IMG/VR virus record: IMGVR_UViG_3300022698_000267
Span: 62,001-126,000 of that record
Reading direction: 5' to 3' (one strand)
DNA length: 64,000 nt
The translations under genes and the position numbers were made by a program. This document shows, in pieces, positions 20-50,232 of the stretch (position 1 is its first letter; every line of letters begins with the position of its first letter). The notes under the pieces were generated by a model, which searched no databases, had not been told where the DNA came from, and saw nothing but the letters and a program-made list of their open reading frames with translations.

Positions 20-1555
20 ATGAAGGACTTTGGAAAGAAAGTTATCTCCCTTATGAATTTGGCCGGTGTGAACACAGGTAGAGCAACTCATTACAATACC
101 AAAGAGGAGAAGGAAGAGATGGAAAAGAAAGTCCATCATGAGATCTTCTCAAAGGACCGTGGGGTCTATGCGGCTGTTCATTGTATGCCAGGGGTAACGG
201 ACTATTCCATACAACGAGCCACAATGGCAATGCTTGGAAATACATGGGAACAGCATAACAAGTCTGCCCTGACTCAGGACGTTGAAACCTTTATATTGAA
301 GAAATTGGTTGCTAATCTTCCTGCAAACAGGATGTTAAATTTGTTTTCCGATATTCGAGAAAATCGAATTAACAACTCAAGGGCGAAGAAAAGGATTATC
401 CTTGAGACCCTGTTGAATGCTAAAGGCATTGATTGGTGGGCTGTTAAATACAGAAACAAAATGCGGAAAGCCCTTGAACATGCCTTGGGAAAGAGAAGAA
501 CCGGAATTTTGAAATCAATTCTTTCTCAGGACAGGATGACTGCCGATGGATTCGCAATCGTCAAGGACTTCATTTTGCAGTATGTAGATTTAGCGGAAAG
601 ACATGTTCTGGTTTTGGACAGTCTACGGTTTATTCTGGGATGTCCAATCGGCGAATCGGAATCAAAACTTTTCAAAGCGTTTAATGACGCCAAGAAAGAT
701 CTCAAAAAAGGTAAGGGTCTTCCAATGGAGGTTTTGGAAGGAATCAGATCAACTTACCATAAAGAGGTTCCTCAGGAAGCTATTCTTGAGCTGACTAAAA
801 AGACCATGACGAATAAGCAGAAACGTCAGGTTCAGAAGAAAGCTCAGAAAGCTGGTGTAGAGGTTAAGTTTGATCCAATGAAGTCCAATACCGTCGACCT
901 TTACATTTATGCTTTTGAAATGGGAATGACTGATGCTGTTGCCAAAGCCTTAAAAGTGAAGGCGGAAAAGATTGCAGCAAGTTTTCCATATTCATTCAAA
1001 CGACTTGGAATTTTGGTGGACGATTCACATAGCATGTCTGGTCATGACACTCAAAAGTTACGACCAATGGCTATCACATTTGCTATCAGAGATGTTCTGA
1101 GAAAAACTGCTGATAAATGTGATATTGAATATGCAACCGGAACCAAACTGAATTTCCATAAGCCAAGGGGAGGAACAGACCTTGCTACTGGTTTGGTTAA
1201 CTTGGCCATGAAAGATCCAGACGCCATTTTTATAATCTCCGATGGTTATGAAAATCAGCCAAGTGGAAGGGTTAATGAAATCCTTATGGCGTTTGAGCGT
1301 GTTGGTTTTAAAAGACCAATTTACCAGATTAACCCTGTGGTTGCATCTGAGACCGGAAAGGGTTTGCGTTCATTAAGTGAATCGATGATTGTAATACCTG
1401 CTTCCAAACCAGAGTCTTTGGTTTCCAATATGTTAATTCCAATGTTGGAAACGGATCCAGTTCGAGCACTTTCCAACATTGTTAACAGTGCCATTAAGTT
1501 GATTGGACAAGGTGATAGAGCTGTGAAAAGATTCTCAGAAGAAGAAATGCTTTAG
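20..1555 (+). CDS. Ro60/TROVE-like helical domain plus C-terminal vWA domain protein
   Basis: C-terminal MIDAS motifs LVDDSHSM, GGTDL, IISDG; basic helical N-terminus with WAVKYR, resembling the conserved KY motif of Ro60/Rsr; SD AAGGAG. Confidence 0.65.
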   Translation: MKDFGKKVISLMNLAGVNTGRATHYNTKEEKEEMEKKVHHEIFSKDRGVYAAVHCMPGVTDYSIQRATMAMLGNTWEQHNKSALTQDVETFILKKLVANLPANRMLNLFSDIRENRINNSRAKKRIILETLLNAKGIDWWAVKYRNKMRKALEHALGKRRTGILKSILSQDRMTADGFAIVKDFILQYVDLAERHVLVLDSLRFILGCPIGESESKLFKAFNDAKKDLKKGKGLPMEVLEGIRSTYHKEVPQEAILELTKKTMTNKQKRQVQKKAQKAGVEVKFDPMKSNTVDLYIYAFEMGMTDAVAKALKVKAEKIAASFPYSFKRLGILVDDSHSMSGHDTQKLRPMAITFAIRDVLRKTADKCDIEYATGTKLNFHKPRGGTDLATGLVNLAMKDPDAIFIISDGYENQPSGRVNEILMAFERVGFKRPIYQINPVVASETGKGLRSLSESMIVIPASKPESLVSNMLIPMLETDPVRALSNIVNSAIKLIGQGDRAVKRFSEEEML

Positions 1556-1570
1556 AAAGGAGGAAATGTA

Positions 1571-2581
1571 ATGAACATTCGAGAAATTTTAAAAGGAACG
1601 ACACCAGGAAAAATTCAGCAAGTCGGGTACATGTCTATCATTCCTGTCCTTCGGGAACCAGAGGATGTGAATGAAAATGTATGTGATCCAACCAAGATTC
1701 TTATCGGTACCAGAAATTATGGTGAAATGGATATGGAAAATCCAACCGATAAAATTGGAATTGTTCCTTTCGGTACTGGAGTATTGACCAAACAGAGAGC
1801 ACAGAATCATGCCACCCCAAAAGCCAAGATTCTGAGATCCAAGGCTTTGGAGAGCATAGACTACGGTGCTTGCATTCAGGAAACTCAAGGTGGATTAATT
1901 TCTAGGGGAGAACATGAATTTACTATTCTTCCTTGGTCTTTGAGAGAAGCCGGAATTCTAACACGTAACAAGAAGGAGTATTCAAAACTTTGGGCGCCAA
2001 TTCGAGAATTCAATAATTCTTTGGGTGTCCGGATAACCGGACACTTGGAAGTTTATTTAGATCATTTTAAGGACGACCTGGATAGTTTTGTTGCGCAGTT
2101 TGAAGTGGTTCCAAATCAAGTCGGTGCCATTATCTTAATGAATGGCTATGTGATGGGGATCGAACTTACCCCAAATTACAGTTACTTCCGGTCCATTTGG
2201 AAACCTTTGATTCGAGAATCTTATGGTTCATTAGTGCTTCAGTACCAGAAACAATTTGGAGAGGATGCTCCTATTCCAAGAACCCGAGTTGCTTTGCAAA
2301 CCAATGTGAAAGACATGAAATCATTGCAAAAGGAATTAGTTCGGACTCAAGAAGCTGAAGATGAAAAGGTTAAAGACGTCATTCGGAAGTTCGTGAATGA
2401 TAAATTTACCTGTACATCGGAAGAGATTGCAGATGGTTACAAAGTTCAGACTGTAACTAATAAGCAATTTATTGGACAGGTGGTAACCAAGGATTCAGAT
2501 GTTCAATATGCTTCTTTGGTAACTTCTGCTAGGGGAATTCGTGAGCAACAGAAGTTCGAAAAGGATGACTTTGTAATCTAA
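1571..2581 (+). CDS. ARPP-like (DUF6569-type) protein, partner of the upstream vWA gene
   Basis: MSIIPV, AQNHA, ACIQETQG, QVGAIILMNG..GIE and W..LIRESYG pattern recalled for the ARPP family; SD AAGGAGG; directly downstream of the vWA gene. Confidence 0.55.
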   Translation: MNIREILKGTTPGKIQQVGYMSIIPVLREPEDVNENVCDPTKILIGTRNYGEMDMENPTDKIGIVPFGTGVLTKQRAQNHATPKAKILRSKALESIDYGACIQETQGGLISRGEHEFTILPWSLREAGILTRNKKEYSKLWAPIREFNNSLGVRITGHLEVYLDHFKDDLDSFVAQFEVVPNQVGAIILMNGYVMGIELTPNYSYFRSIWKPLIRESYGSLVLQYQKQFGEDAPIPRTRVALQTNVKDMKSLQKELVRTQEAEDEKVKDVIRKFVNDKFTCTSEEIADGYKVQTVTNKQFIGQVVTKDSDVQYASLVTSARGIREQQKFEKDDFVI

Positions 2582-3120: not shown

Positions 3121-3822
3121 ATGTCTAAATTTAAATTTTCGTTGATTCTAATTGTTTTACTTTTCCCTTTGACTGTTTATTGCACTGAACCAACTTCTCA
3201 GAATTATATGACCAGAACAGAAGTCAAGGATTTGATCAAAGACTACAACACAATCACATGGAAGCAGTACGTTGATGCAAGATTTAAAGAACTGCAAGAT
3301 GAAATAAAACTTAGGTCAGACTCTATAACCAAGTCCACTGAATTGGTTAAAGAAGGAATGGACATTCGATTCTATGCCGTCAAGGAAGCAACTGATAATG
3401 CAAGAGTGGCTATGGAAAAACGTTTGGATGGAATGAATGAATTCAGATCCGCACTTAAAGATCAGGCGGTTCAATTTGTAAACAAAGATGAGTATGCTGC
3501 AAGGGGAACGCAGTACGGAGCAGATATAGCCCGACTCAGGGATCAGATTTCAGGTACAGTTACACAAACAACATTCAAAGCAACTCTGGCACAGAGGGAT
3601 GAAATTAATAAACGGAACACGGACGACATTAAAAGCCTGTTGTTGTCCAGAGCAGAACTTGAAGGGAAAGCAACTCAAACTCAGGCGTTGATCGCTATGG
3701 CAATGGGTTTGGTTGGAACATTACTATCCGGAATCAGCATATTTGTTTCAATAGTTAGACGTTCTCGCAATAATAATCAGTACAGGGCTACAGACAGTAT
3801 AGATAAACAGCGATCTGCATAA
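3121..3822 (+). CDS. Coiled-coil protein with N-terminal signal/TM and C-terminal TM
   Basis: Start moved to ATG 3121 (SD GAGGT); FSLILIVLLFPL and ALIAMAMGLVGTLLSGISIFVSIV hydrophobic segments. Confidence 0.6.
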   Translation: MSKFKFSLILIVLLFPLTVYCTEPTSQNYMTRTEVKDLIKDYNTITWKQYVDARFKELQDEIKLRSDSITKSTELVKEGMDIRFYAVKEATDNARVAMEKRLDGMNEFRSALKDQAVQFVNKDEYAARGTQYGADIARLRDQISGTVTQTTFKATLAQRDEINKRNTDDIKSLLLSRAELEGKATQTQALIAMAMGLVGTLLSGISIFVSIVRRSRNNNQYRATDSIDKQRSA

Positions 3823-3909
3823 TCGATAGAAGATGTATTAGCAATCCTTCCAAATATAACTCTACTATATTTCATTACAATCTACTAAAATTAGTACTAG
3901 AGGTGACTT

Positions 3910-4623
3910 ATGATCTACGTTTGTGGTGACGTTCACGAATTTAAAGACAAAGATAAACTGTCTTCCAAAAATTGGCCTGAAGGAAAACTTCTTTCCAAAG
4001 ATGATTATTTAATAGTTCTTGGAGACATGGGACTAATCTGGGATGCTATATCCTCCCCAAGAGAAAAAAGATTAATTGAATGGTATAATCAAAAATCATG
4101 GACCACTTTATTCATAGATGGTAACCATGAAAACTTTGATCGTCTATTCTCAGATGAGTTTGGCAATGTACCAAAATTTGGATCGACTGTCAAACAAATA
4201 TCCGATTCTATATACTATTTAAAAAGAGGAAATGTATACAAAATAGATAATCGAAAGGTCTTTACCTTTGGAGGTGGGGAATCCATTGATAAAAATAGAA
4301 GATTAACCAGGATTAGTTGGTGGTATCAAGAGATTCCAAATTATCGAGAAATGGATAAAGCTATTGATAAATTGAAAAATTTTGATAATTGTGTCGATTT
4401 TATCCTCACACATGCTTGCTCAAATCTTGCATTTGAGATGTTAATGCAAAGAGCCGACCTAGGATATAAAAGAGATGCTGAAAGGGCATTACGGTCCTTC
4501 TTAGACTGGATAGAAAGGAATGTGCAATTTAAACAATGGCATTTTGGCCATTATCATGATGATTTTAAATTAGATAATAAGCATTTTCTGCATTATGAAA
4601 ATAAACCAATGCGAATTGTTTAA
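3910..4623 (+). CDS. Calcineurin-like metallophosphoesterase
   Basis: GDVH, LGDMG, DGNHE, LTH, FGHYH motifs. Confidence 0.9.
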   Translation: MIYVCGDVHEFKDKDKLSSKNWPEGKLLSKDDYLIVLGDMGLIWDAISSPREKRLIEWYNQKSWTTLFIDGNHENFDRLFSDEFGNVPKFGSTVKQISDSIYYLKRGNVYKIDNRKVFTFGGGESIDKNRRLTRISWWYQEIPNYREMDKAIDKLKNFDNCVDFILTHACSNLAFEMLMQRADLGYKRDAERALRSFLDWIERNVQFKQWHFGHYHDDFKLDNKHFLHYENKPMRIV

Positions 4624-4635
4624 AAAATACTAATA

Positions 4636-6152
4636 ATGTATGAAAGGAATAAGATGGATACAATACCTGAAAAGGGAAAAAGGTACAATATCAAATCTCG
4701 TCCTTGGGACGCAAGCTATCTCGATATTATAGAATCTGAGGAAGGAGATTGGATTTATGATCCTATAAATTCTGAAACAGATTCTGAAACAGAATATGGT
4801 TATGGAAATTGTCCTGATTGTGGATGGTACAAAGAACCACAAGGTTGTAACGTACCAAGAGATAGTCCGGGATGTAATCTAAACAGAACAGAAAGAAAGG
4901 AAGTAAAAAATGAACGACTTCGTTAAAGAAGCTGAAAAGAATTGCGTAAATGTTGCTAAAAATATGTCTGATATGCTCAATGTTATTAAAGCCCTAGAAA
5001 GGTTTGGCAGTAAATTCTTCAGTTATGATAGCATAGAAAAATCCGCTTATCAAAAAGGGGTTAATCTAATAAGGGAAGCTATTTACGCTCGATACATAGA
5101 ATCCATTAGTAATTGTTTTCTATTTGTTGGTGTCGGTGGTGAAGATGCTGCAGCATACTCCAAAGAAAAATTTAAAGAACTGTTTGGAAAAGAAGAAAAT
5201 GCTATTATGCAACTTCTAGACGAACATGGCACTTATCCTTCTTGGTATGAATCTGATAAAGAAGAAAAATTTCGTGAACAAGCAAAGAAGAAATTAGAAG
5301 AAGTGGAAGTTGGAAAAAAGTAAAATGGAACTGAAAGAATTTAAGGCATATTTCAAAAAAAGTCTAGAAGTATTTGAAGAGATATTTCCAGCTGCTACTA
5401 AAAATAAACAACTTGATTTAGCTCTTGATGATTTATTCTTAAAAGTACATACTCCAGTATGTTCCAATTGTGGAATGCTTGTCAGTGAATCTGAAGTTCT
5501 TTGTACAAATTGCGATCCTTATTATTGTGATAGCTGTGGAAAACCTTCAGATTTTCTTAAATGTTCTAAATGTGTCGACAAAATTGTTGAAAGAACAGTT
5601 GCAGATAAAATGAAAGAACATAGAAATATGCAAGCCGATGTGATACATGCAGAAAAGGGTTTATTGGCAGCGCTCAAAAGAAAATATGAGAAGGAGTAAC
5701 TTATGGAAAACACAATTCAATACATTGTATGTAAAAAATGTGGAGAGACCCTAAATCCTGCAGTAAATTATTGTCCCAATTGTGGCCTTTCTGTTCCAAA
5801 GCCTCCAAAGAAGAAATATTCTGGTACTTGTATAGAAGATGGAATTTACGAAGTAACTTTTAGACCTGTTCGTGGTCACTTTAGTACTATGGATGGAGCT
5901 AAAGAAGCTGCTATAAATTCTTGTTGGAATGAAGATGAAGAAATGGCAGAGGGTTTCGAGATTAAAAGAATTCATTCCAATTGTAATATAAAAGTCTTCC
6001 CCTATATCTGCGGAGATTGTTATGATACAGTAGCAAAAAAAGATGAAATTGATGGACATTGCTCTTTTTGTGATGCAATAAACTGGATTGAACGGGATGG
6101 AACAGAGAGTGAAGGAGAAATCCATTACAATTCTAAAAAAGGAAGGTCATAG
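4636..6152 (+). CDS. Four tightly packed hypothetical genes (4636, 4910, 5310, 5703), several with CxxC zinc ribbons
   Basis: Overlapping stop/start junctions; CxxC pairs; 5310..5699 is a paralog of 21724..22029. Confidence 0.6.
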
Positions 6153-6632
6153 ATGTACTTTTTTACGGCAGATGAGCATTATGGACACAAGAACATAATC
6201 AGATTTTGTGACCGCCCATTTTTATCTATCGAAGAAATGGATAGAACCATTATTGATAGAAATAATCAAATGGTTGGCAATAACGATACAGTGGTTCATG
6301 TTGGTGATTTTACATTGAAAAATACATCCATTGCTAAGCGTTACATTTCACAGCTAAATGGAAACCACATTTTTATAAGAGGGAGTCACGATTACTGGTT
6401 GAAAGGGACTCAAAAACTAGTAACCATGTGGGAAAAGAAGATTGAAGGACAGTATATAGTAGCCTGTCATTATGCCATGCGGCATTGGCCCAGATCTTAT
6501 CATGGGAGTTGGCAAGTTCATGGACACGCTCATGGAGGTATGAAGTCTATCGGATTGCAATATGATGTGGGTGTGGATAAAAATAATTTTTATCCAGTAT
6601 CATTTACTAAATTGTGTAGTATACTTGCTTAG
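6153..6632 (+). CDS. Phage metallophosphoesterase
   Basis: TADEHYGH, VGDF, RGSHD, CHY, HGHAHG, DVGVD motifs. Confidence 0.9.
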   Translation: MYFFTADEHYGHKNIIRFCDRPFLSIEEMDRTIIDRNNQMVGNNDTVVHVGDFTLKNTSIAKRYISQLNGNHIFIRGSHDYWLKGTQKLVTMWEKKIEGQYIVACHYAMRHWPRSYHGSWQVHGHAHGGMKSIGLQYDVGVDKNNFYPVSFTKLCSILA

Positions 6633-17013: not shown

Positions 17014-17073
17014 TGATCCAGACATTTAAATGTGGTGGATGAATTCACTATGAAAAATAATAAGGAGCATGTT

Positions 17074-17973
17074 ATGGAACTGACAGTTTATGGTTGCAGG
17101 GGCAGCATTCCAACACCGTCAACAAAGGAACATAGCACAATTATATATGGAGGAGACACGACTTGTTTTAAAGTCTCTTTCGAAGGTCTCAAAACTCACC
17201 TTATTCTCGATTGTGGTTCCGGAATGCGTCAATTGGGAAATGATTATATTCCTAGTCATGTTCTACAAGGCAATCCAGTACAAGCAGTCATTTGTTTGAC
17301 TCATTTTCATCACGATCATATTCAGGGAATTCCTTTCTTCGCCCCACTGTATATGAAGCAGAATCATTTCCTTTTTATTGGTCCTGTTTTCGATGGAATT
17401 ATTGGTGAGACAAGGAAACAAGTGCAGGATTATCTGCGACATGAACAACTGCCTCCATTTTTTCCTGTGTATCATGATTGCATGCCCTCCCAGAAAAAAT
17501 ATTTGGATGTTATTCCTGGTGAACAAGTTTTGATTTCACCAGATCTTATGGATTCATTTGATTTCTCATCTTTTCATGATAAAGTCGAGATTACAACCTT
17601 TGCTTTGAATCATCCGAATGGGGCTTGTGGTTATCGAGTAGAGTATCGTGGAAAGGTCATTTGTTTCTGTGGTGATCATGAACATTTAGGCTCTCCTTAT
17701 GTGCTATTTGAAAAATACTGTCAAGATTCTGATCTTTTGGTTATGGATGCTGCATATACTGAAGAGGAGTATATGAATTCAAACAATCCTAAGCAGGGAT
17801 GGGGACATGGAACAATTGGTAGTTGTATTGCTGAAGGGGAGAAATTAAATGCGAAGCAAGTTATGCTTTCACATCATGATCCTTTACATGATGATGTATT
17901 TCTTGCTAATGCTGAGGATAAACTTCCAGAAAATTTCTTCTTTGCAAAACAAGGAATGGTAATAGACATATGA
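17074..17973 (+). CDS. MBL-fold metallo-hydrolase (RNase Z / cyclic-nucleotide phosphodiesterase-like)
   Basis: GCRGSIP, LDCGSG, THFHHDHIQG, HP..ACGYR, GDHE, WGH, SHHDP; start at ATG 17074 with SD AAGGAG. Confidence 0.9.
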   Translation: MELTVYGCRGSIPTPSTKEHSTIIYGGDTTCFKVSFEGLKTHLILDCGSGMRQLGNDYIPSHVLQGNPVQAVICLTHFHHDHIQGIPFFAPLYMKQNHFLFIGPVFDGIIGETRKQVQDYLRHEQLPPFFPVYHDCMPSQKKYLDVIPGEQVLISPDLMDSFDFSSFHDKVEITTFALNHPNGACGYRVEYRGKVICFCGDHEHLGSPYVLFEKYCQDSDLLVMDAAYTEEEYMNSNNPKQGWGHGTIGSCIAEGEKLNAKQVMLSHHDPLHDDVFLANAEDKLPENFFFAKQGMVIDI

Positions 17974-19932: not shown

Positions 19933-20505
19933 ATGAGAGAGCAATTACCACAATTTGATCTTGGAGCACATATCAATATCCCTAAAGATAAACAAATTTT
20001 TACTGAAGAAGATCTGCCGGCCATCATCCTTACCAATCCGAAGTATCCTCATAATGTTGGAGCTGCTGTTCGTGGAGCATCATGTTATGGTGCTAAAACA
20101 GTAATTTTTACTGGAGATAGACTCCTTACTAGTCTAGCCTTGGTTTCTAAAACCAAGAAGGGTTGGCGACTTCCAAGAGAGGAGCGAATGAAGGGATACA
20201 AAGACGTCAGAATTTTCAATGATGACAAACCATTCAATCGATTTCCAGCAGATACCAGTTTCGTAGCCATTGAGGTTAAACCAAATTCCGAATGGCTCCC
20301 GAATTTTGCACATCCAAATAAAGCAGTTTACATTTTCGGTCCTGAGGATGGTTCAATACCATCAGTTTATTTGCGTCATTGTCATCGATTTGTCATGATT
20401 CCAACTAAGCATTGTTTGAATCTTGCTGTTGCAGTGAATACTGTTCTATACCAAAGGAATTGTTCTTTCGGTGTTGTAACAGCGGATGATATCGATATGA
20501 TCTAA
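19933..20505 (+). CDS. SpoU/TrmH family RNA 2'-O-methyltransferase
   Basis: NPKYPHNVGAAVR, YIFGPEDGSI, IPTKHCLNLAVA SPOUT motifs. Confidence 0.9.
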   Translation: MREQLPQFDLGAHINIPKDKQIFTEEDLPAIILTNPKYPHNVGAAVRGASCYGAKTVIFTGDRLLTSLALVSKTKKGWRLPREERMKGYKDVRIFNDDKPFNRFPADTSFVAIEVKPNSEWLPNFAHPNKAVYIFGPEDGSIPSVYLRHCHRFVMIPTKHCLNLAVAVNTVLYQRNCSFGVVTADDIDMI

Positions 20506-27244: not shown

Positions 27245-28108
27245 TATTCAGCGATACTGAAAATGATAGTTCATCCTTGCGACACGTATCCAACTTGTGA
27301 TACGTGTCCAACATATACAAGTACTACTGAAGCAACAGATTCAGTACGAATATATGTTGGAAATTCATTCGTTAGTGAAACTAAACGTGATGAAGAAAAG
27401 GCATTCAAGGATTATAAAGAATTACAACATTTAATGCATGTTGCAGAAAGGCATGCAGAACAAAAAGCATGGTGGTATGCTGGTTTTGGAAAAGTTCATC
27501 TTTACGACGTTAAACCAAAAAGTCATTTAATTCATAGACGAATGATGTCCTGTAATAGATTTGATTAAGAAGCAGAATTTTAAAGTGAAAAGGGAATTAG
27601 AATGCCAATCGTAATTATTCATGAAGAAGTTTTTAGTTCCAAAGACGCTAACCCAGGTTTATATGGATCAGTTGACTTTCCTGGGGAAATGTTAATCAAA
27701 ACTCATTCAGGATTATGGTTTAATACTGCAGGTACGGAATTAAATCCCAAAGAAATTTTTCTTACTAATGTCTACACAGATCCTGATGAAGAAGAGATAA
27801 ATCCAAGTGGAGAGAAGTATAAAGAAACAAGTCTAACAGATTGTAAGCATGATTTTTTCATGGCTGTTTGTAAGAAATGTAAACAAGTTGTTCCACTTTA
27901 AAATGATAGAACCCATTATACATAAACAAGGTAGGGAAACTGCTACAAAATATGTAGGGTTTGGTCAGTACGAAGAGATAAAAGCTCCTCTATGTGTGGG
28001 TGCCAAAATGTTGTATAAGGGTTTCTCTTATTATATACATAGAAACTGGAAGTATGTGACATGTAAACATTGTTTGAAGAAAAAGAGGATTAGAAAGTGA
28101 TTAAAAAT

Positions 28109-28246
28109 AGCTGGCAGCGGCGCTGGAGCGAAAGCGCACCGTATCGAGCACGGGAGTAATTGGGTGGATGTCCAGGGCTCGACCGATGGGGTACTAAACG
28201 ATCCGTCAAATTGCTCATAGCCGGGGTAGCGTCCGGTCTGCCAGTT
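28109..28246 (+). ncRNA. tRNA-like structured ncRNA with very long variable arm
   Basis: GC-rich intergenic island; CTGGCAG/CTGCCAG acceptor-like stem, GCGC D-like stem, CCGT/ACGG stem with 7-nt loop, 15-bp variable-arm helix, GCCGGG-GTAGCG-TCCGGT T-like arm; no CCA. Confidence 0.75.
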
Positions 28247-29795
28247 AAAATAACTACTAGAAGTGAAATACAGGGATAATTGAATGAGACGTTGCTATTT
28301 TTGTAAAGAACCAATCTCATTACTAGCAACTTATTATATAGTAAAGGTTCCTACGAAACCAAAAGGTGTGTCAAATAGATGGAAACAAATTGGAGTTGCT
28401 TGTGAAAGATGTCAGGATAAGACACCTATAAAGGATAAAAGGAAAGATAATGACAAATATAGTCTGTACTCGGACTGAATGTTTTTACAATATACTGTGT
28501 GTAGGTTATTTTGGATGTAAAGCAACTGCTATTGGAATTACTGAGAAAGGATGCGATACTTATTTTAATTACTCTGAAACTCTAAAAGAAATTGAAGAGG
28601 AATTTCAAGTTGCTTCAGATTCTGAAAAGGTCGATTGATGAACATTGAAAAAGCTCGTAAGATTATAGGAAAAACTGAATATTTTCGTTCATACTTTCGG
28701 AAAGATATAGTTGATGCAATTAATTGGGTACTTGACACTTATCCGAATTGTGACAATTCCATATGCAGCAAACACCTATATCATGAATCAGGATGTAAAC
28801 TTTGCGAAGCAATTACTGTGGCTGAGTTAATCATAATTGATAAGAGAGGAGAGACAATGAAAGATACTAATATAAGGGAAAAATTAAAGAAGGAATCAGC
28901 CCGTCTAGAGAGTCTGAAGAAGTCTATAGACGCTGTTCTGGCAGAACCCATAGAGGAATCAGAACCATCGGATGTTAGTATAACTCTGGTTGGAAATCCC
29001 GAATGGTTACAAAAGCTTCAAGAACTTCATGAGCTTCATGAAGAGTTGGTTGCGGAGGCTATTGTCAAATGAAATTAGAAGATTACATCGAGAAGGCTAA
29101 AAAAGAATTAGATGATCTACAAAACCAATTTGTGGAAAGCAATAAGAAAGATCCTGATATGTGGCCTTTGGAAATGGAAGAGACTGATTGGGGCGATCAG
29201 GAATTGGCCGCAAGGTTTGGACAGATTTAAATTATGAGTAGTGCAATCGATATAAATGATTTTTTAAAATCTACAGAATCTAATGTCTGTATGGGTCATT
29301 TCATGGATATGCCAGATTGTCCTGGTAAAATTGATAGTAAACTCCCTATCTGTAAAGATTGTGTTGCTCAAGCAATGGAAGCAATGGAGCAGTCAATATG
29401 GCAACAATAAGTCCAGCAATTAAAGAAATTTCTGAGTTGATTATCAAAGAGGGAAATATCAGATCCAATACTGACCAATACCAAAATACTAATTCTGCTA
29501 TTCATTCTGTATTAATGGATCTGGTTCCAATATTATGTGGAACTATGGAAAAGAATGTTAAAAGAAAAAAGAAAACTGGAAGCAATGATGAAATTGCGAA
29601 CTGTTTGTGAAAGAGAAATATGGTCTGGTTTCTTTGGAATAGATGAATATGGTACTCAGCCTGAATGTGGACAAGAGATTGAAATAGAAGTAGAAGAGGA
29701 TTGTATAATCAATGACAAATATGGAATTCGACCCTCATTTTCAGTGGAATGTCCAAAATGTCATGGAACTATAGCATGGCCTCAACAGTGGGAAG

Positions 29796-30779
29796 TTGTG
29801 GAGAATGATAATGATAATAAATGAAAAACTAACAGTTAATGAAAAAATAATAGTGTATATGATCTTTGGTTCTCATCTATATGGAACTAACACACCTGAT
29901 TCTGACACAGATTACAAAGGGGTTTTCTTTCCAACTAAAGAACAGATATTTCTTGGAAGAATCCCAAAATCTTATTCCACCAGCCCAAAGAAAACAGGAC
30001 AGGGACAAAAAAATACCTCTGATGATACTGATATAGAAATCTATTCTCTCCACTACTTTTTAAAATTAGCATGTGAAGGACAAACTGTTGCTATAGACAT
30101 GCTTCACGCTCCAAGTCATATGCTTTTGGAATCTTCTGAGATTTGGGATTTCATTGTAGGAAATAAACATAGATTCTACAGCAGAGATATGGATTCTTTT
30201 ATTCGCTATGCTAGGAAACAGGCGGCTAAATATGGAATAAAAGGTAGTCGTTTAGCCGTAACCAAAGAATTTATAGATTTACTAAATTCTGTTCCAGATG
30301 ATACAAGACTTTCTGAGTTATGGAATAAACTTCCAGATGGTGAACATTGTTATTTTGTGGAAGATGACCCAAAAGGAATTGCTCAATATCAAATCTGTGG
30401 AAAAAAGTTTCAAGCTACTAGTAAAGCATTGTATGTTAAGAAAATAGTTCAAAGTTTCTATGATCGTTATGGTGAACGTGCTAAACAGGCTGAATTAAAT
30501 CAAGGGATTGATTGGAAAGCAGTTTCACATGCTTTAAGAGCCGCTTATCAAACCAGGCAAATTTTAACAGAAGGAACCATAACTTATCCTCTAAAAGAAT
30601 CTGGTTTTCTACGGGATGTGAAGCAGGGTTATTTTCACTACACTAAATACGTTGGTCCTGTTTTAGAAGCTCTTATGGATGAACTTGAAGAGCTTTCTAA
30701 AAATAGTGATCTTCCTGCAACAGCCGATAGAAAGTACTGGGATACCTTCCTCATAGATCTCATCGATGCAACTCTTTAA
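29796..30779 (+). CDS. Pol-beta superfamily nucleotidyltransferase (T4 NrdC.11 / RlaP-like)
   Basis: FGSHLYGTNTPDSDTDYKGV and DWKAVSHALR. Confidence 0.85.
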   Translation: MWRMIMIINEKLTVNEKIIVYMIFGSHLYGTNTPDSDTDYKGVFFPTKEQIFLGRIPKSYSTSPKKTGQGQKNTSDDTDIEIYSLHYFLKLACEGQTVAIDMLHAPSHMLLESSEIWDFIVGNKHRFYSRDMDSFIRYARKQAAKYGIKGSRLAVTKEFIDLLNSVPDDTRLSELWNKLPDGEHCYFVEDDPKGIAQYQICGKKFQATSKALYVKKIVQSFYDRYGERAKQAELNQGIDWKAVSHALRAAYQTRQILTEGTITYPLKESGFLRDVKQGYFHYTKYVGPVLEALMDELEELSKNSDLPATADRKYWDTFLIDLIDATL

Positions 30780-35212: not shown

Positions 35213-36022
35213 TCAATTTGATTCTTCGATGATTGGGTCTTCTCCATTGAAAATAACTCCTACTCTATTGGTTACTTTAGAAAATACAGGCATATCTAGT
35301 CTTCTAACTTCTGTTCTTTCAATTTCTAGATCAGGATTCTCTCTTGCTTCATGTTTTGGTGGAAGTTTTTCAATTTCTTTAGTATCAAACTTCCTAAGGA
35401 CTGTTCTTTTTTGGAAGTACATTCCTCGTTTAAAATTAGCAGGATAATCATTCCAGTTCACACCTTTTTCAAATAACATTTCCTGCATATCTTTTCCATT
35501 TTTCTTGTGTAATTGTTTGTGGGAATAGTATACTCTTGCTGCCATTGAAATACTATTTTTGGTAGCATCAAATTCTCTCCACAAAATAACATTGGCTGCT
35601 TCTTGTTTAGTCGGGACTTCCCATGCTCTACAATCGAATAGAGCAACTCTGTGTGCTTTTTCAGGAATCATCTTACTTAAATAAGCATTAAAGGTTGCAG
35701 TGGTCACAGAAGTTAAAACAGAAACCATTTTCAATATTTTTCTATCAAAAAATATTTGGCTTTTCAAATTGTCACTGTAATATACCAGACTAATTTCATC
35801 TGATTGTGTATGACCAATACAGGCATTAGTTTCTTTAACAAGAGTATCAACAACAATACCCATTAATTCTGATAGTCTTACATCATAAGGACGTTCTAAT
35901 CCTTTTGTAAATTGACTGAAATTTTTACCATCAATTCGTACACAGATTGGAACCATAGGAAGAAACTTTCGTTTACTTTCACGTCCTTCATACATTTTCA
36001 TTCTGTCGCCTAAATCATCCAT
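35213..36022 (-). CDS. thg1: Thg1-like 3'-5' nucleotidyltransferase (tRNA-His guanylyltransferase family), intact active site
   Basis: DRMKMYE, RIDGKNF, QSDEISL, FDCR, WR..DA.KNSI, GVNWNDYP..FKRG. Confidence 0.93.
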   Translation of the reverse strand: MDDLGDRMKMYEGRESKRKFLPMVPICVRIDGKNFSQFTKGLERPYDVRLSELMGIVVDTLVKETNACIGHTQSDEISLVYYSDNLKSQIFFDRKILKMVSVLTSVTTATFNAYLSKMIPEKAHRVALFDCRAWEVPTKQEAANVILWREFDATKNSISMAARVYYSHKQLHKKNGKDMQEMLFEKGVNWNDYPANFKRGMYFQKRTVLRKFDTKEIEKLPPKHEARENPDLEIERTEVRRLDMPVFSKVTNRVGVIFNGEDPIIEESN

Positions 36023-36036
36023 TTATCATTTCCCTC

Positions 36037-36855
36037 TTATTTTGTATCAACAATTGGGTCTTCTCCATTGAAAATAACTCCTACTCTATTGATTACTTCG
36101 GAAAATGGAGGCATGTCTAATCTTCTGACTTCCGTTCTTTCAAATTTCAGATCAGGATCTTTTCTTGCTATGTGTTTTGGTGGAAGATCTGTAATTTCCT
36201 CTTTATTGAACTTTTTGGAAACTTTTCTTCTTTGGAAAAAAGTTCCTCGTTGAAAACTAACAGGATAATCGTTTTTCCAATCCATATCTTTTTCAAGTAA
36301 CATTGCTAATCTATCTTCTTCATTCTTTCCCAACAATTGTTTATGTGAGTAATATTGTCTTGCTGCTATTGAAATACTTTTTTCAATTGCGACAGTTTCT
36401 TCCCATAGAATAATATTGGCTGCCTCTTCCAATGTTGGGACTCCCCAAGCTTTGCAAGAAAACACAGCAACACGGTGTGCTTTTTCTGGTATTACTTCTG
36501 GAAGGTATCTATTAAATGTTGCAGTAGTTACAGAAGAGATGACAGAAATCATTTTCATTATTTTTCTATCGAAAAATATTTGACCCTTCAAATCGTCATT
36601 GTAATAAATCAGATTGATTTCATTTGATTGTATATACCCAATGCAAGCATTAGTTTCTTTGACAATGGCTTCAGTAACAATCCACATCAAATCTCGCATT
36701 CGTGTATCGAAGGGTTTATCTAATCCTTTTGTAACTCGCTTCCAATCTATACCAGTAACTTGTATACAAATTGGAATCAAGGGCATAAATCTTCGATTAC
36801 TTTCACTACCTTTGTAAAGTCTCGTTCTTTCAAATAAATCGTCTAATTTGTTCAT
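36037..36855 (-). CDS. Thg1-like paralog lacking catalytic residues
   Basis: Collinear with 35213..36022 but QVTG for RIDG, QSNE for QSDE, FSCK for FDCR. Confidence 0.88.
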   Translation of the reverse strand: MNKLDDLFERTRLYKGSESNRRFMPLIPICIQVTGIDWKRVTKGLDKPFDTRMRDLMWIVTEAIVKETNACIGYIQSNEINLIYYNDDLKGQIFFDRKIMKMISVISSVTTATFNRYLPEVIPEKAHRVAVFSCKAWGVPTLEEAANIILWEETVAIEKSISIAARQYYSHKQLLGKNEEDRLAMLLEKDMDWKNDYPVSFQRGTFFQRRKVSKKFNKEEITDLPPKHIARKDPDLKFERTEVRRLDMPPFSEVINRVGVIFNGEDPIVDTK

Positions 36856-37110
36856 TTTAATCTCCTATAAAATGTCTTTATTCCAGCCGGGTTTTGTGTT
36901 ATCAAGTCTTTTATACCAATCTTGATTGGCTAAGGTTATTGATGTACTCTTATTTTCATTCTGATCTTTCATGAAAGTCAAAGCTCGTAGAACGTAAAGA
37001 TCTTTTTCTAGATATTCTTGTGCTACGTCAAGATGACAATGCTTTTTTACTACTTCCCTCATTGTCATAGAAACTAATAGTCCGTCAATGATTTGTGAAG
37101 CATCCATTTA

Positions 37111-37596
37111 TCATTTCCTTTCTTTCCAATCAGTTATTTTAAAGGCTCTATCTTCGGTTATGTGAACAGAAAATAATTTATCAAAACCTTCATTCATACT
37201 TGGTATTTCTAATCTTTGATAGCTGGCTATTACAGCTACTTTTGGAAGATTTTTATCAAGTCGTTTTTCATTTCTTTTTATACAGATATCTAAATTTGCC
37301 TGAAAATAAAAACCAATAATCGGCATTTTTACTTTCTTCAATAAGGGAAAGTATTTTTCTCTTTCTTTTTTAGAGGGATTGGTATTATCGATAACCATTG
37401 GTTGTTCTGTTTCAATACAAAATTGAATTAATTTTGATTCTCGATTTCTGGTTTTCAACATATCCAGATTGACTCTTATATGCGTATCTGCAAAGTTCTT
37501 CTGATAGAAGGTTGATTTTCCGGTGGCTGGGATTCCAATAAAAATTATGTTATTCCTTTTCCAAGAAGCTGTTGACTTGTTTGAACTGCTTTCCAT
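37111..37596 (-). CDS. P-loop polynucleotide-kinase-like protein (AAA_33 type)
   Basis: GIPATGKST Walker A, VNLDML, VIDNTN...R, RN..R, EGFD. Confidence 0.88.
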   Translation of the reverse strand: MESSSNKSTASWKRNNIIFIGIPATGKSTFYQKNFADTHIRVNLDMLKTRNRESKLIQFCIETEQPMVIDNTNPSKKEREKYFPLLKKVKMPIIGFYFQANLDICIKRNEKRLDKNLPKVAVIASYQRLEIPSMNEGFDKLFSVHITEDRAFKITDWKERK

Positions 37597-49731: not shown

Positions 49732-49860
49732 ATGGTCGACAAAGGTAAGGTCTGGTTGAGGTGTATGGAGTGTGGTAATAAGTTTTCACGATCACTTTCC
49801 AAAAGTCTTTACAATGTCAAATGTCCCAAATGTAAATCCTATGATGTGGAGGTGGACTGA
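49732..49860 (+). CDS. 42-aa zinc-ribbon protein (not in ORF track)
   Basis: CMECG...CPKCKS; SD GGGAGGT; first gene behind promoter 49675. Confidence 0.75.
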   Translation: MVDKGKVWLRCMECGNKFSRSLSKSLYNVKCPKCKSYDVEVD

Positions 49861-50076
49861 TGAGAGACCCAAATAGAACAGCATTTTTTATTTTGGACGA
49901 AAGAGAAGAACGTCGAGTTGCCAATCGGGGCATTGCCGCTAGAAACCGGGATTATCGAGAAACCCTCCGGCTTACCGGAGACCGGCGTGCTGCCACCAGA
50001 GCGTACTGTGCCGGTAACAAATGGCTCATGGAGAATGCACGAGCCTGTGGAAATCTTCCCTAACATCCCCTCCCCC

Positions 50077-50104
50077 TACGGGCTCCCGGAAACGGGGGTC
50101 CGTA
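50077..50104 (+). terminator. GC hairpin with GAAA tetraloop
   Basis: TACGGGCTCCCG-GAAA-CGGGGGTCCGTA. Confidence 0.65.
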
Positions 50105-50232
50105 CCCCTCTAAAGTACCTCTATTTTTCCTCATATGAACCTCATTCTATATGCTCTAAGACACAACGACGCATATTTTATCGTCTGTCTTTTCTTTCGC
50201 AAAATAAAGCAGAAATTTTCTTCAAATAATAC

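What the first reader, a model, noticed from the sequence alone, without database searches (positions are those of the whole stretch)
28109..28246. GC-rich tRNA-mimic ncRNA with a giant variable arm and non-canonical T loop
Seen: cloverleaf order is kept: 7-9 bp acceptor-like stem (28109-28117/28238-28246), 2-nt linker, GCGC D-like stem with GG in the loop, 4-bp stem with 7-nt loop ATCGAGC, a ~63-nt arm (GAGTAATT/AATTGCTC then GGTGGAT/ATCCGTC), and a T-like arm whose loop is GTAGCG rather than TTCRA. No U8, no U33, no CCA, so unlikely to decode. Inference: decoy for tRNA nucleases, a Y-RNA analogue for the Ro60-like protein (though the canonical bulged Ro helix is not evident), or a Thg1 substrate.
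Basis: partly seen in the sequence, partly recalled or inferred. Interest (0 to 1): 0.8.

Follow-up and report, generated by a model that had tools for sequence, protein, structure and literature searches.

The report
Orphan cloverleaf-shaped phage RNA element
A 140-base GC-rich stretch between two small genes of an uncultured jumbo phage folds into a very well-defined five-helix, cloverleaf-ordered RNA; it is not a tRNA or any catalogued RNA family, has no detectable relative, and so remains a real but unexplained singleton.

Summary
Window 28108-28247 (+) is one of two strong GC islands in 64 kb. Against 1000 dinucleotide shuffles, stability, fold definition and topology each fall in the best 0.4-0.8%. 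Eight G.U pairs of 48 point to a plus-strand RNA.

It is not a tRNA. ARAGORN finds nothing, even with lowered thresholds and a shortened long arm, and Rfam finds nothing.

No homologue turned up in related loci, IMG/VR or GTDB pattern scans, phage or plasmid records. The closest relative lacks the whole 2.55-kb small-ORF block that holds the element. No RNA-seq run was listed.

However, it has its own partners: five YrlA-like permuted-tRNA units just upstream of the window, and one more in a relative. A model built from those units does not hit this element.

Best reading: an orphan, non-decoding, tRNA-shaped structured RNA. Its function is inferred only. Interest is moderate.

The parts
28108..28247 (+). 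Whole structured element: a five-helix junction of 140 nt
   Evidence: The MFE fold equals the centroid at -58.5 kcal/mol. Model R1 hits only this copy in the window. The identical copy is present in a second sample, L156.
28108..28117 (+).
   Evidence: It pairs with 28238-28247 over 10 bp, including one G.U. The inverted 8-mers are unique in the window.
28120..28137 (+). Hairpin 1: 5-bp stem, 8-nt loop GGAGCGAA (D-like, or V-like in the permuted reading)
   Evidence: The loop holds GG and AGCGAAAG. The latter is a 7-of-8 near-match to the YrlA Ro60-binding motif GNCGAAN0-1G quoted in PMC4201824, but it sits in a loop rather than in the terminal stem.
28139..28153 (+). Hairpin 2: 4-bp stem, 7-nt loop AUCGAGC (anticodon-like, with U at position 2 and nominal anticodon CGA; UCGA also resembles a T loop)
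   Evidence: Loop bases 28144-28149 are complementary to 28177-28182 at the apex of the long arm (-8.7 kcal/mol).
28154..28216 (+). Hairpin 3: 63-nt long arm (8 bp, bulge, 9 bp, internal loops, weak apical hairpin)
   Evidence: It starts with no linker after hairpin 2. It contains 5 of the 8 G.U pairs.
28220..28237 (+). Hairpin 4: 6-bp stem, 6-nt loop GUAGCG (T-like by position; D-like in the permuted reading, where it is preceded by UA and its loop holds GGUAG)
   Evidence: There is no UUCRA T-loop consensus. ARAGORN rejects it.
28238..28247 (+). Closing stem, 3' strand
   Evidence: It is followed by UAAAAUAAC, with no encoded CCA and no U-run terminator.
28101..28109 (.). Left copy of a near-direct repeat, TTAAAAATA, flanking the GC island. 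The right copy, TTAAAATAA, is at 28246-28254.
   Evidence: Read directly. It is the basis of the insertion (TIR+TSD) rival explanation.

Best explanation
The element is a genuine structure at the RNA level on the plus strand. It is a 140-nt five-helix junction with the helix order and junction spacing of a class II tRNA, or equally of a permuted YrlA-type Y RNA.

It lies in a lineage-specific block of small early-type genes in a 273-kb jumbo phage, 1.55 kb upstream of an RlaP RNA-repair nucleotidyltransferase gene.

I think it is most likely transcribed by read-through with its neighbours, trimmed to a stable small RNA, and used as a non-decoding, protein-binding tRNA-shaped RNA. That would make it a scaffold or decoy within this phage's unusually rich tRNA-repair and RNA-surveillance set: a Ro60-like protein with YrlA-like RNAs, two Thg1-like enzymes, RlaP, and a PNK/PSTK-like kinase.

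Shown here: the fold, its strand specificity, its statistical distinctness, its single-copy orphan status, and its non-membership of tRNA and Rfam families.

Inferred only: transcription, processing, trans action, and any partner.
For: - The fold is stable and well defined, and it is cloverleaf-ordered far beyond shuffles.
- It is plus-strand specific: 8 of 48 pairs are G.U, and the minus strand folds 14 kcal/mol worse.
- It is a GC island exactly filling a 183-nt intergenic gap in an AT-rich genome, as structural RNAs do.
- The linker lengths 2, 1, 0, 3, 0 compare with 2, 1, 1, 1, 0 in class II tRNA. They also match the order closing-V-T-AS-D of unit U6 of the phage's own YrlA-like RNAs.
- The RlaP gene downstream sits within 3 kb of tRNA genes in 10 of 37 related loci. 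In the loci with large arrays it sits at their 3' edge.
- The window encodes two Thg1-like proteins, a PNK/PSTK-like kinase, a SpoU methylase, an MBL-fold protein with weak RNase Z similarity, and a Ro60-fold protein.
- T4 keeps two stable non-tRNA RNAs of similar size, RNA C and RNA D, in its tRNA region. Their roles are unknown, and RNA C folds with a canonical T arm.
Against: - There is no homologue anywhere, so there is no covariation support.
- The nearest relative, L155, lacks the element and the whole 2.55-kb block.
- No RNA run was listed, so transcription is unshown.
- No promoter or terminator consensus flanks it.
- The tRNA tertiary-interaction nucleotides (U8, A14, T54-Psi55-C56, A58) are not in place.
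- Neither Rfam tRNA nor YrlA, nor the phage-specific YrlA-like model R2, detects it.
- The shuffle z-score of -2.7 is good but not extreme.
Confidence: 0.4

Rival explanations
1. It is a cis-acting mRNA element. The structure stays within the polycistronic transcript and acts as a processing site, a 3'-exonuclease barrier, or a spacer that uncouples the upstream 65-aa ORF from the downstream 64-aa ORF. It has no trans function.
For: - It starts 8 nt after the upstream stop codon and ends 37 nt before the next start, all on the same strand.
- There is no own promoter or terminator consensus. By contrast, the phage's YrlA-like cluster has an 11/12 sigma-70-like promoter.
- It is specific to this lineage's small-ORF block.
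Against: - A simple hairpin would do for stabilisation or processing. A well-defined four-hairpin junction with tRNA-like spacing is more elaborate than needed.
- The downstream ribosome-binding site is not sequestered by the fold.
Confidence: 0.25
2. It is a relic of inserted foreign or mobile DNA, such as a MITE-like GC-rich mini-element. On this view the apparent RNA structure follows from terminal and internal inverted repeats and has no RNA function.
For: - GC is 58-61% against 36.7% for the window.
- It has 8-10-bp terminal inverted repeats and flanking near-direct repeats TTAAAAATA / TTAAAATAA.
- It lies in a hyperplastic block that the closest relative lacks.
- A second GC-rich foreign-looking island exists at about 49.9-50.1 kb.
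Against: - It is single copy. The two-loop and stem-loop patterns hit the 273-kb contig only once, and nothing related turned up elsewhere in IMG/VR, GTDB genomes, plasmids or phages.
- Eight G.U pairs make the structure strand-specific, which DNA palindromes are not.
- The fold is a multi-branch junction rather than the long hairpin typical of MITEs.
Confidence: 0.2
3. It is an additional, highly divergent Y RNA for the phage's Ro60-like protein, read in the permuted order: closing stem = Ro-binding/anticodon-like stem, then V, T, acceptor-like and D hairpins.
For: - The 20..1555 protein has a Ro60 fold.
- The element has the same five-helix order and similar linkers as unit U6.
- Hairpin 2's loop, xUCGAGx, resembles the YrlA T-loop consensus.
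- The linker UA followed by GC, and GGUAG in hairpin 4, resemble a D arm.
- AGCGAAAG is a near-match to the Ro60-binding motif.
- Bacteria can have several Y RNAs (PMC4201824).
Against: - Rfam YrlA does not hit it even at E<=10.
- Model R2, built from the phage's own units, gives nothing at the element with filters off.
- Local alignment to the cluster is not above shuffles.
- It lies 26.5 kb from the gene, whereas known YrlA genes and this phage's units are adjacent to it.
- The near-motif lies in a loop.
- The relative L184 keeps the adjacent units. Whether it has this element is unknown, because its contig is only 7.6 kb.
Confidence: 0.1
4. It is a functional decoding tRNA-Ser(CGA) with an expanded variable arm.
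For: - The 7-nt loop has U at position 2 and the triplet CGA.
- It has a long extra arm, as in class II tRNAs.
- A relative, L002, has a tRNA-Ser(CGA) upstream of its RlaP gene.
Against: - ARAGORN finds nothing at any threshold, with introns allowed, or after shortening or removing the arm.
- The Rfam tRNA and tRNA-Sec models find nothing at E<=10.
- The anticodon-like stem has 4 bp and there is no T-loop consensus.
- There is no U8 or A14, and no G73 or CCA.
- UCG is only 6.4% of Ser codons.
Confidence: 0.02

Closest known systems
Class II tRNA (Ser/Leu/Tyr/Sec, and allo-tRNAs with 8/4 or 9/3 acceptor/T arrangement, PMC5389517)
   Same: The five helices run in the order closing stem, hairpin, 7-nt-loop hairpin, long extra arm, hairpin. 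The linkers are 2 and 1 nt at the first two junctions and 0 nt before the closing strand. It is GC-rich within an AT-rich phage genome, and it sits where relatives keep tRNA arrays upstream of RlaP.
   Different: The extra arm is 63 nt rather than about 13-25 nt. The closing and last stems are 8-10 + 6 bp rather than a 12-13 bp total. The anticodon-like stem has 4 bp. There is no U8, A14, T-loop UUCRA or CCA. No tRNA detector or model sees it.
YrlA-type bacterial/phage Y RNAs (Rfam RF02553; Chen et al. 2014, PMC4201824), including the five units next to this phage's own Ro60-like gene
   Same: The size is 130-150 nt. A closing stem encloses four hairpins with junction spacing 1 / 0 / 2-3. It is encoded by a phage that has a Ro60-fold protein.
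   Different: It has none of the strongly conserved T-arm (GGUUCGAnUCC) or D-arm (UAGCUCAAUUGGUAGAGC) sequence. It is not adjacent to the Ro60-like gene. Neither RF02553 nor a model of the phage's own units detects it.
T4 RNA C / RNA D (species 1 and 2 stable RNAs of the T4 tRNA region)
   Same: These are phage-encoded non-tRNA RNAs of 139 and 119 nt, associated with a tRNA gene region. Their function is still unknown (PMC3014915, PMC9697503). RNA C folds with tRNA-like parts plus large extra arms.
   Different: RNA C keeps a canonical T arm and lies directly after tRNA genes in a processed precursor. There is no sequence similarity to the element, and the element has no tRNA gene within the 64-kb window.
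tmRNA tRNA-like domain and viral 3' tRNA-like structures
   Same: They use a tRNA shape for a non-decoding purpose.
   Different: Those keep the T loop, the acceptor end and the CCA, and they are aminoacylated. ARAGORN's tmRNA search and the Rfam tmRNA models are negative here.

Membership tests
tRNA (RF00005 / ARAGORN) | Detected by tRNA covariance model or ARAGORN | tested here: not met
   ARAGORN finds 0 genes in the window. It also finds 0 with lowered thresholds, with introns allowed, and with the long arm removed or cut to 3-8 bp. No RF00005 or tRNA-Sec match appears at E<=10 in 27900-28450.
tRNA (RF00005 / ARAGORN) | Cloverleaf helix order with 2-nt and 1-nt linkers and coaxial last stem/closing stem | tested here: met
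   In the MFE fold, which equals the centroid, the linkers are 2, 1, 0, 3, 0.
tRNA (RF00005 / ARAGORN) | Conserved tertiary nucleotides U8, A14, G18G19, T54-Psi55-C56, A58; 5-bp anticodon stem; 7-nt T loop | tested here: not met
   Read. Position 8 is C. The last hairpin's loop is GUAGCG, which is 6 nt. The anticodon-like stem has 4 bp. Only GG in the first loop and U at loop position 2 are present.
tRNA (RF00005 / ARAGORN) | Aminoacylation and decoding | not testable with these tools
   Indirect evidence only: the cognate UCG codon is 6.4% of Ser codons and 0.4% of all codons in 44 window ORFs.
YrlA / bacterial Y RNA (RF02553) | Match to the YrlA covariance model (conserved T and D arms around an acceptor-like hairpin) | tested here: not met
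   There is no RF02553 match at E<=10. Model R2 of this phage's own five units scores 68-84 bits on them and 53 bits on a relative's unit. It finds nothing at 28108-28247 with filters off.
YrlA / bacterial Y RNA (RF02553) | Encoded next to a Ro60/TROVE gene | tested here: not met
   The Ro60-fold gene is at window 20..1555. The element is 26.5 kb away. The YrlA-like units are 1-2 kb upstream of the gene.
YrlA / bacterial Y RNA (RF02553) | Ro60-binding motif GNCGAAN0-1G on the 5' strand of the terminal stem (PMC4201824) | tested here: not met
   Only AGCGAAAG is present, a 7/8 match. It is located in the loop and 3' strand of hairpin 1, not in the closing stem.
YrlA / bacterial Y RNA (RF02553) | Physical binding to Ro60 | not testable with these tools
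   This needs immunoprecipitation from infected cells.
tmRNA | tRNA-like domain plus tag reading frame | tested here: not met
   ARAGORN's tmRNA mode and the Rfam tmRNA models are negative.
Miniature inverted-repeat mobile element | Terminal inverted repeats and target-site duplication | tested here: inconclusive
   There are 8-10-bp inverted termini and the flanking repeats TTAAAAATA / TTAAAATAA. In a 63% AT genome the short repeat could be chance.
Miniature inverted-repeat mobile element | Multiple copies in the same or the host genome | tested here: not met
   There is one R1 hit in the window. The pattern scans hit the 273-kb contig once each. No related copy was found among 77 GTDB pattern hits, plasmids or phages. 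The host genome is unknown.
Any conserved structured RNA family | Homologues with compensatory base changes | tested here: not met
   No homologue was found, so covariation could not be assessed. The only second copy, L156, is identical.

The most novel reading that the evidence does not exclude
The element would be the founding member of a third kind of tRNA-shaped RNA in phages, beside true tRNAs and YrlA-type Y RNAs. It would be a non-decoding class-II-like cloverleaf with a 63-nt rod. The rod's apex can pair with the anticodon-like loop. The RNA would serve as a decoy for host tRNA-targeting nucleases, or as a scaffold or substrate for the phage's own Thg1-like, RlaP and kinase repair enzymes.
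Probability: 0.15. Interest if true: 0.7.

Novelty: new variant of a known kind. Interest (0 to 1): 0.4.

Why it matters
Phages carry tRNAs and tRNA-like RNAs partly to survive host defences that cut tRNAs, and partly to steer RNA repair and surveillance. This jumbo phage combines a Ro60-like protein with a battery of YrlA-like RNAs, two Thg1-like enzymes, RlaP and an RNA kinase.

An extra tRNA-shaped RNA that cannot decode would be a cheap and testable candidate for a decoy or scaffold in that conflict. T4's RNA C and RNA D show that such phage RNAs can stay unexplained for 50 years.

As it stands, the element is a single sequence with no conservation or expression data. Its value is as a lead, not a result.

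Tried and rejected
1. Ordinary, intron-containing or long-arm tRNA, and tmRNA. Rejected by ARAGORN and Rfam.

2. Any Rfam 15 family. No hit at gathering threshold in 64 kb, and only noise at E<=10 locally.

3. Homologue hunting, all negative:
- blastn against phages and plasmids;
- blastn and nhmmer against 13 IMG/VR RlaP loci;
- single-sequence model R1 against 57 RlaP loci, 32 IMG/VR pattern loci, 77 GTDB pattern loci, and the contigs of homologues of neighbouring proteins;
- three IMG/VR pattern scans and one GTDB pattern scan.

4. Neighbour-guided search.
- Homologues of the 439-aa upstream gene led to L155, which lacks the block.
- The 64-aa downstream ORF is an orphan.
- RlaP homologues led to tRNA- and RtcB-linked loci without the element.

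5. Expression. No RNA run was listed. The one DNA run holds only a 190-bp contig beside the element.

6. Homology to T4 RNA C. It has a similar size and context, but it keeps a canonical T arm and shares no sequence with the element.

7. Homology to the phage's own YrlA-like units. Model R2 and Smith-Waterman alignment were both negative. The similarity AGCUGGCAGC / AGCUUGGCAGC of the closing strands is not above chance.

8. Protein-coding reading. Only a 79-aa TTG ORF on the opposite strand and ORFs of 20-39 aa on the plus strand were found, with no support.

9. A shared promoter motif with the YrlA-like cluster. Absent from the window.

10. Sequence-level TROVE assignment of the 20..1555 protein. 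It failed in Pfam, PHROGs, NCBIfam and PDB sequence or profile searches. Only the fold comparison succeeded.

Full report
**Source and setting**

The window is bases 62001-126000 of IMGVR_UViG_3300022698_000267, a 273.5-kb uncultured jumbo-phage contig. Overall GC is 36.7%. The finding lies in a 183-nt gap between two plus-strand small ORFs, 27903..28100 and 28284..28478.

**Observation**

The minimum-free-energy structure is identical to the centroid.
- A 10-bp closing stem, 28108-28117 with 28238-28247.
- A 2-nt linker.
- Hairpin 1: 5 bp, loop GGAGCGAA.
- A 1-nt linker.
- Hairpin 2: 4 bp, 7-nt loop AUCGAGC.
- A 63-nt long arm that follows with no linker.
- The linker AUA.
- Hairpin 4: 6 bp, loop GUAGCG, stacked directly on the closing stem.

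Against 1000 dinucleotide-preserving shuffles:
- the energy has z = -2.73 (0.8% of shuffles as good);
- ensemble diversity is 7.4 against a mean of 31.6 (0.7%);
- a spanning closing stem of at least 7 bp with at least four branches occurs in 0.4%.

The 100-nt GC maximum of 0.61 is more than 4 sd above the window mean. Only one other island is comparable.

The reverse strand folds 14 kcal/mol worse, with a different and ill-defined structure. 8 of the 48 pairs are G.U. The structure is therefore a property of the plus-strand RNA, not of the DNA.

One detail is wrong. The 7-nt loop has U at position 2, so a U33 equivalent exists and the nominal anticodon is CGA.

**What it is not**

*Not a tRNA or a known family.*
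- ARAGORN finds no tRNA or tmRNA in the 64 kb.
- It still finds none with lowered thresholds, with introns allowed, or after I removed the long arm or shortened it to 3-8 bp.
- Rfam 15 gives no hit at gathering threshold in the window.
- In a local permissive search (E<=10) it gives only three noise hits. None is to tRNA, tRNA-Sec, tmRNA or YrlA.
- The conserved tertiary nucleotides of tRNA are not in place, the anticodon-like stem has 4 bp, and the last loop has 6 nt.

*Not a useful decoder.* UCG, the codon a CGA anticodon would read, is 6.4% of Ser codons in 44 window ORFs.

*Not protein-coding.* The coding readings are unconvincing.

**Search for relatives**

Nothing related was found by any of these:
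- blastn against 50,697 phage records or 72,556 plasmids;
- blastn or nhmmer against related loci;
- a single-sequence covariance model, R1, searched over 57 RlaP loci, all pattern-hit loci, and the contigs of homologues of neighbouring proteins;
- three degenerate-pattern scans of IMG/VR and one of 185,579 GTDB genomes, which returned only chance hits in coding or GC-rich DNA.

The only other copy is the identical sequence in a second sample (3300022701), locus L156.

The closest relative I could find is L155. Its 439-aa gene and its RlaP gene are each about 73% identical to those of the window. In L155 those two genes are separated by a single 66-aa ORF. The 2.55-kb block 27245-29795, which holds ten small ORFs plus the element, is absent. 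The 64-aa ORF next to the element is itself an orphan.

The consequences are these:
- The element is lineage-specific and sits in a hyperplastic region.
- Covariation cannot be assessed.
- No RNA-seq run was listed, and the one DNA run was uninformative, so transcription is untested.
- No sigma-70-like promoter or intrinsic terminator flanks the element, which suggests read-through transcription.

**Context**

*The RlaP gene.* The gene 1.55 kb downstream (29811..30779) is an RlaP-family nucleotidyltransferase. This family is predicted to restore lost nucleotides during RNA repair (PMC7824862).
- In 10 of 37 related loci with enough flank, a tRNA gene lies within 3 kb upstream of RlaP.
- In the relatives with large arrays (L002, L004/L029, L021, L025), RlaP sits within about 1.4 kb of the 3' end of arrays of 14-30 tRNAs.
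- In L162, RlaP follows RtcB among tRNAs.
- The element therefore sits where some relatives keep tRNA genes. No other neighbouring gene is shared with those loci.

*Other RNA enzymes in the window:*
- two tandem Thg1-like genes and a PNK/PSTK-like kinase;
- a SpoU methylase;
- an MBL-fold protein with weak RNase Z similarity;
- an ARPP-1 protein.

**The Ro60 question**

Sequence methods do not recognise the 20..1555 protein as TROVE. Three results nevertheless support a Ro60-like protein:
- The language-model atlas placed it next to TROVE clusters.
- An AlphaFold model built on 34 homologues is confident (pLDDT 90.5, pTM 0.87).
- The model's nine best PDB matches are all Ro60/TROVE structures, aligned over their full length. 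They include a Thermus phage Ro60 (E 1e-5 to 5e-4, TM up to 0.57).

Fetching the DNA upstream of the window (L183) changes the picture for the RNA, however. At 1-2 kb upstream of that gene lies a cluster of five permuted-tRNA / YrlA-like units and one canonical-order tRNA.
- Each unit has a canonical T arm, an acceptor-like hairpin whose loop holds NCCA, and a canonical D arm.
- Rfam scores are 27-37 bits for YrlA (below the gathering score of 69, E down to 2.6e-6) and 41-57 bits for tRNA.
- The units form a repeat family with compensatory stem changes.
- A strong sigma-70-like promoter precedes the cluster.
- A relative, L184, has a Ro60-like gene at 59% identity followed by ARPP-1. It has one such unit and a tRNA in the gap upstream of the gene.

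These units are the expected Y-RNA partners. A covariance model of their T-acceptor-D core (R2) scores 68-84 bits on the units. It finds nothing at the 28.1-kb element with filters off. Local alignment of the element to the cluster is not above shuffles.

**Two readings of the fold**

The five helices fit a class II tRNA in normal order: acceptor, D, anticodon, variable, T. The linkers are 2, 1, 0, 3, 0, against 2, 1, 1, 1, 0 in a class II tRNA.

They fit the permuted YrlA order about as well: closing stem, V, T, acceptor-like, D. In that order they match unit U6 of the phage's own cluster at the inner linkers 1 / 0 / 2-3.

In the permuted reading, three features are reminiscent of T and D arms: the loop xUCGAGx of hairpin 2, the UA-GC start of hairpin 4, and GGUAG in hairpin 4's loop. 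The models do not support homology, so I cannot choose between the two readings.

Loop bases 28144-28149 are complementary to 28177-28182 at the apex of the long arm (-8.7 kcal/mol). This could be a loop-loop contact, or it could be chance.

**Explanation and rivals**

My best reading, at confidence 0.4, is a real but orphan, non-decoding, tRNA-shaped RNA. It would be made by read-through and trimming, and it would act as a protein-binding scaffold or decoy within this phage's RNA-repair and surveillance set. Only the structure, strand, uniqueness and non-membership are shown. Everything about function is inference.

The rivals are:
- a purely cis-acting mRNA structure (0.25);
- a relic of a GC-rich inserted or mobile element, suggested by the inverted termini and the flanking repeats TTAAAAATA / TTAAAATAA, but opposed by the G.U asymmetry and single-copy status (0.2);
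- a very divergent extra Y RNA for the Ro60-like protein (0.1);
- a decoding tRNA-Ser (0.02).

**Comparison with known RNAs and novelty**

The nearest analogues are class II tRNAs and allo-tRNAs, YrlA Y RNAs, and T4 RNA C and RNA D. The T4 RNAs are 139 and 119 nt, lie in the tRNA region, and still have no known function.

The element fails the membership tests for tRNA, YrlA and tmRNA. I rate it a new variant of a known kind, namely phage tRNA-shaped non-coding RNAs. This rests on a single sequence, and interest is moderate.

The most notable by-product is the Ro60-like + YrlA-like + ARPP module just outside the window.

Noticed in passing
L183:5930-6950 (own contig, 1-2 kb upstream of window position 1; window pos = L183 pos - 7981): A cluster of five permuted-tRNA / YrlA-like RNAs plus one canonical-order tRNA (ARAGORN calls it Leu-CAA, 6105-6180). 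Each unit runs T arm, then an acceptor-like hairpin with NCCA in its loop, then a D arm. Two units continue into an anticodon-like hairpin. The cluster lies behind an 11/12 sigma-70-like promoter and directly upstream of the Ro60-like gene. Rfam YrlA scores are 27-37 bits, below gathering. The units show compensatory stem changes.
   Followed up: partly
window 20-1555 (+); the ORF really starts at L183:7932, 50 nt before the window: This protein has no Pfam, PHROG, NCBIfam or PDB sequence hit to TROVE. Its AlphaFold model (pLDDT 90.5) nevertheless matches Ro60/TROVE structures as its top nine PDB hits, and it has a C-terminal vWA domain with a DxSxS motif. The family has 552 clusters at E<=1e-3 in the representative library.
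   Followed up: yes
L184:2586-3227 and 3228-5811: A relative (Ro60-like 59% identical, followed by an ARPP-1/ARPP-2 protein as in window 1571-2581) has one YrlA-like unit (R2 53 bits, 2764-2828) and a tRNA (2917-2988) in the gap upstream. The module of Ro60-like gene, ARPP and permuted tRNA-like RNA is therefore conserved.
   Followed up: partly
window 35213-37596 (-): Two tandem Thg1-like genes (269 and 272 aa), followed by an AAA_33 kinase. The kinase's best NCBIfam matches are L-seryl-tRNA(Sec) kinase and polynucleotide kinases, all below cut-off.
   Followed up: no
window 27245-29795 versus L155:11327-11524: The 2.55-kb block of ten small ORFs, many with CxxC pairs, that holds the element is replaced by a single 66-aa ORF in the closest relative. 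There the flanking 439-aa and RlaP genes are each about 73% identical to those of the window.
   Followed up: yes
window 49860-50140: This is the second strong GC island (0.62). It holds a GC-rich 67-aa ORF (49860..50063), followed by a GC-rich hairpin. It looks foreign to this AT-rich genome and is unrelated to the element.
   Followed up: no
L004:2698-2786, L029:2813-2901, L025:3269-3361: ARAGORN calls tRNA-Ile(TAT) genes of 89-93 nt with a long variable arm. That is a class II shape with an Ile-type anticodon, reminiscent of allo-tRNAs. They occur in phage tRNA arrays upstream of RlaP.
   Followed up: no
L162:6293-9385; L002, L004, L021, L025, L029: RlaP genes sit at the 3' edge of large phage tRNA arrays (14-30 genes), or directly after RtcB. 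In L162, RtcB appears split, with a faint LAGLIDADG hit. 10 of 37 loci have a tRNA within 3 kb upstream.
   Followed up: partly
window 17032-17973 (+) and 19933-20505 (+): An MBL-fold protein whose best NCBIfam match is ribonuclease Z, far below cut-off, and a SpoU-family 2'-O-methyltransferase. These are further possible tRNA/rRNA-acting enzymes.
   Followed up: no
L157:14688-15193: A 507-nt gene-free gap directly upstream of an RtcB gene in a distant relative. No tRNA, Rfam or R1 hit was found there, and it was not examined further.
   Followed up: no
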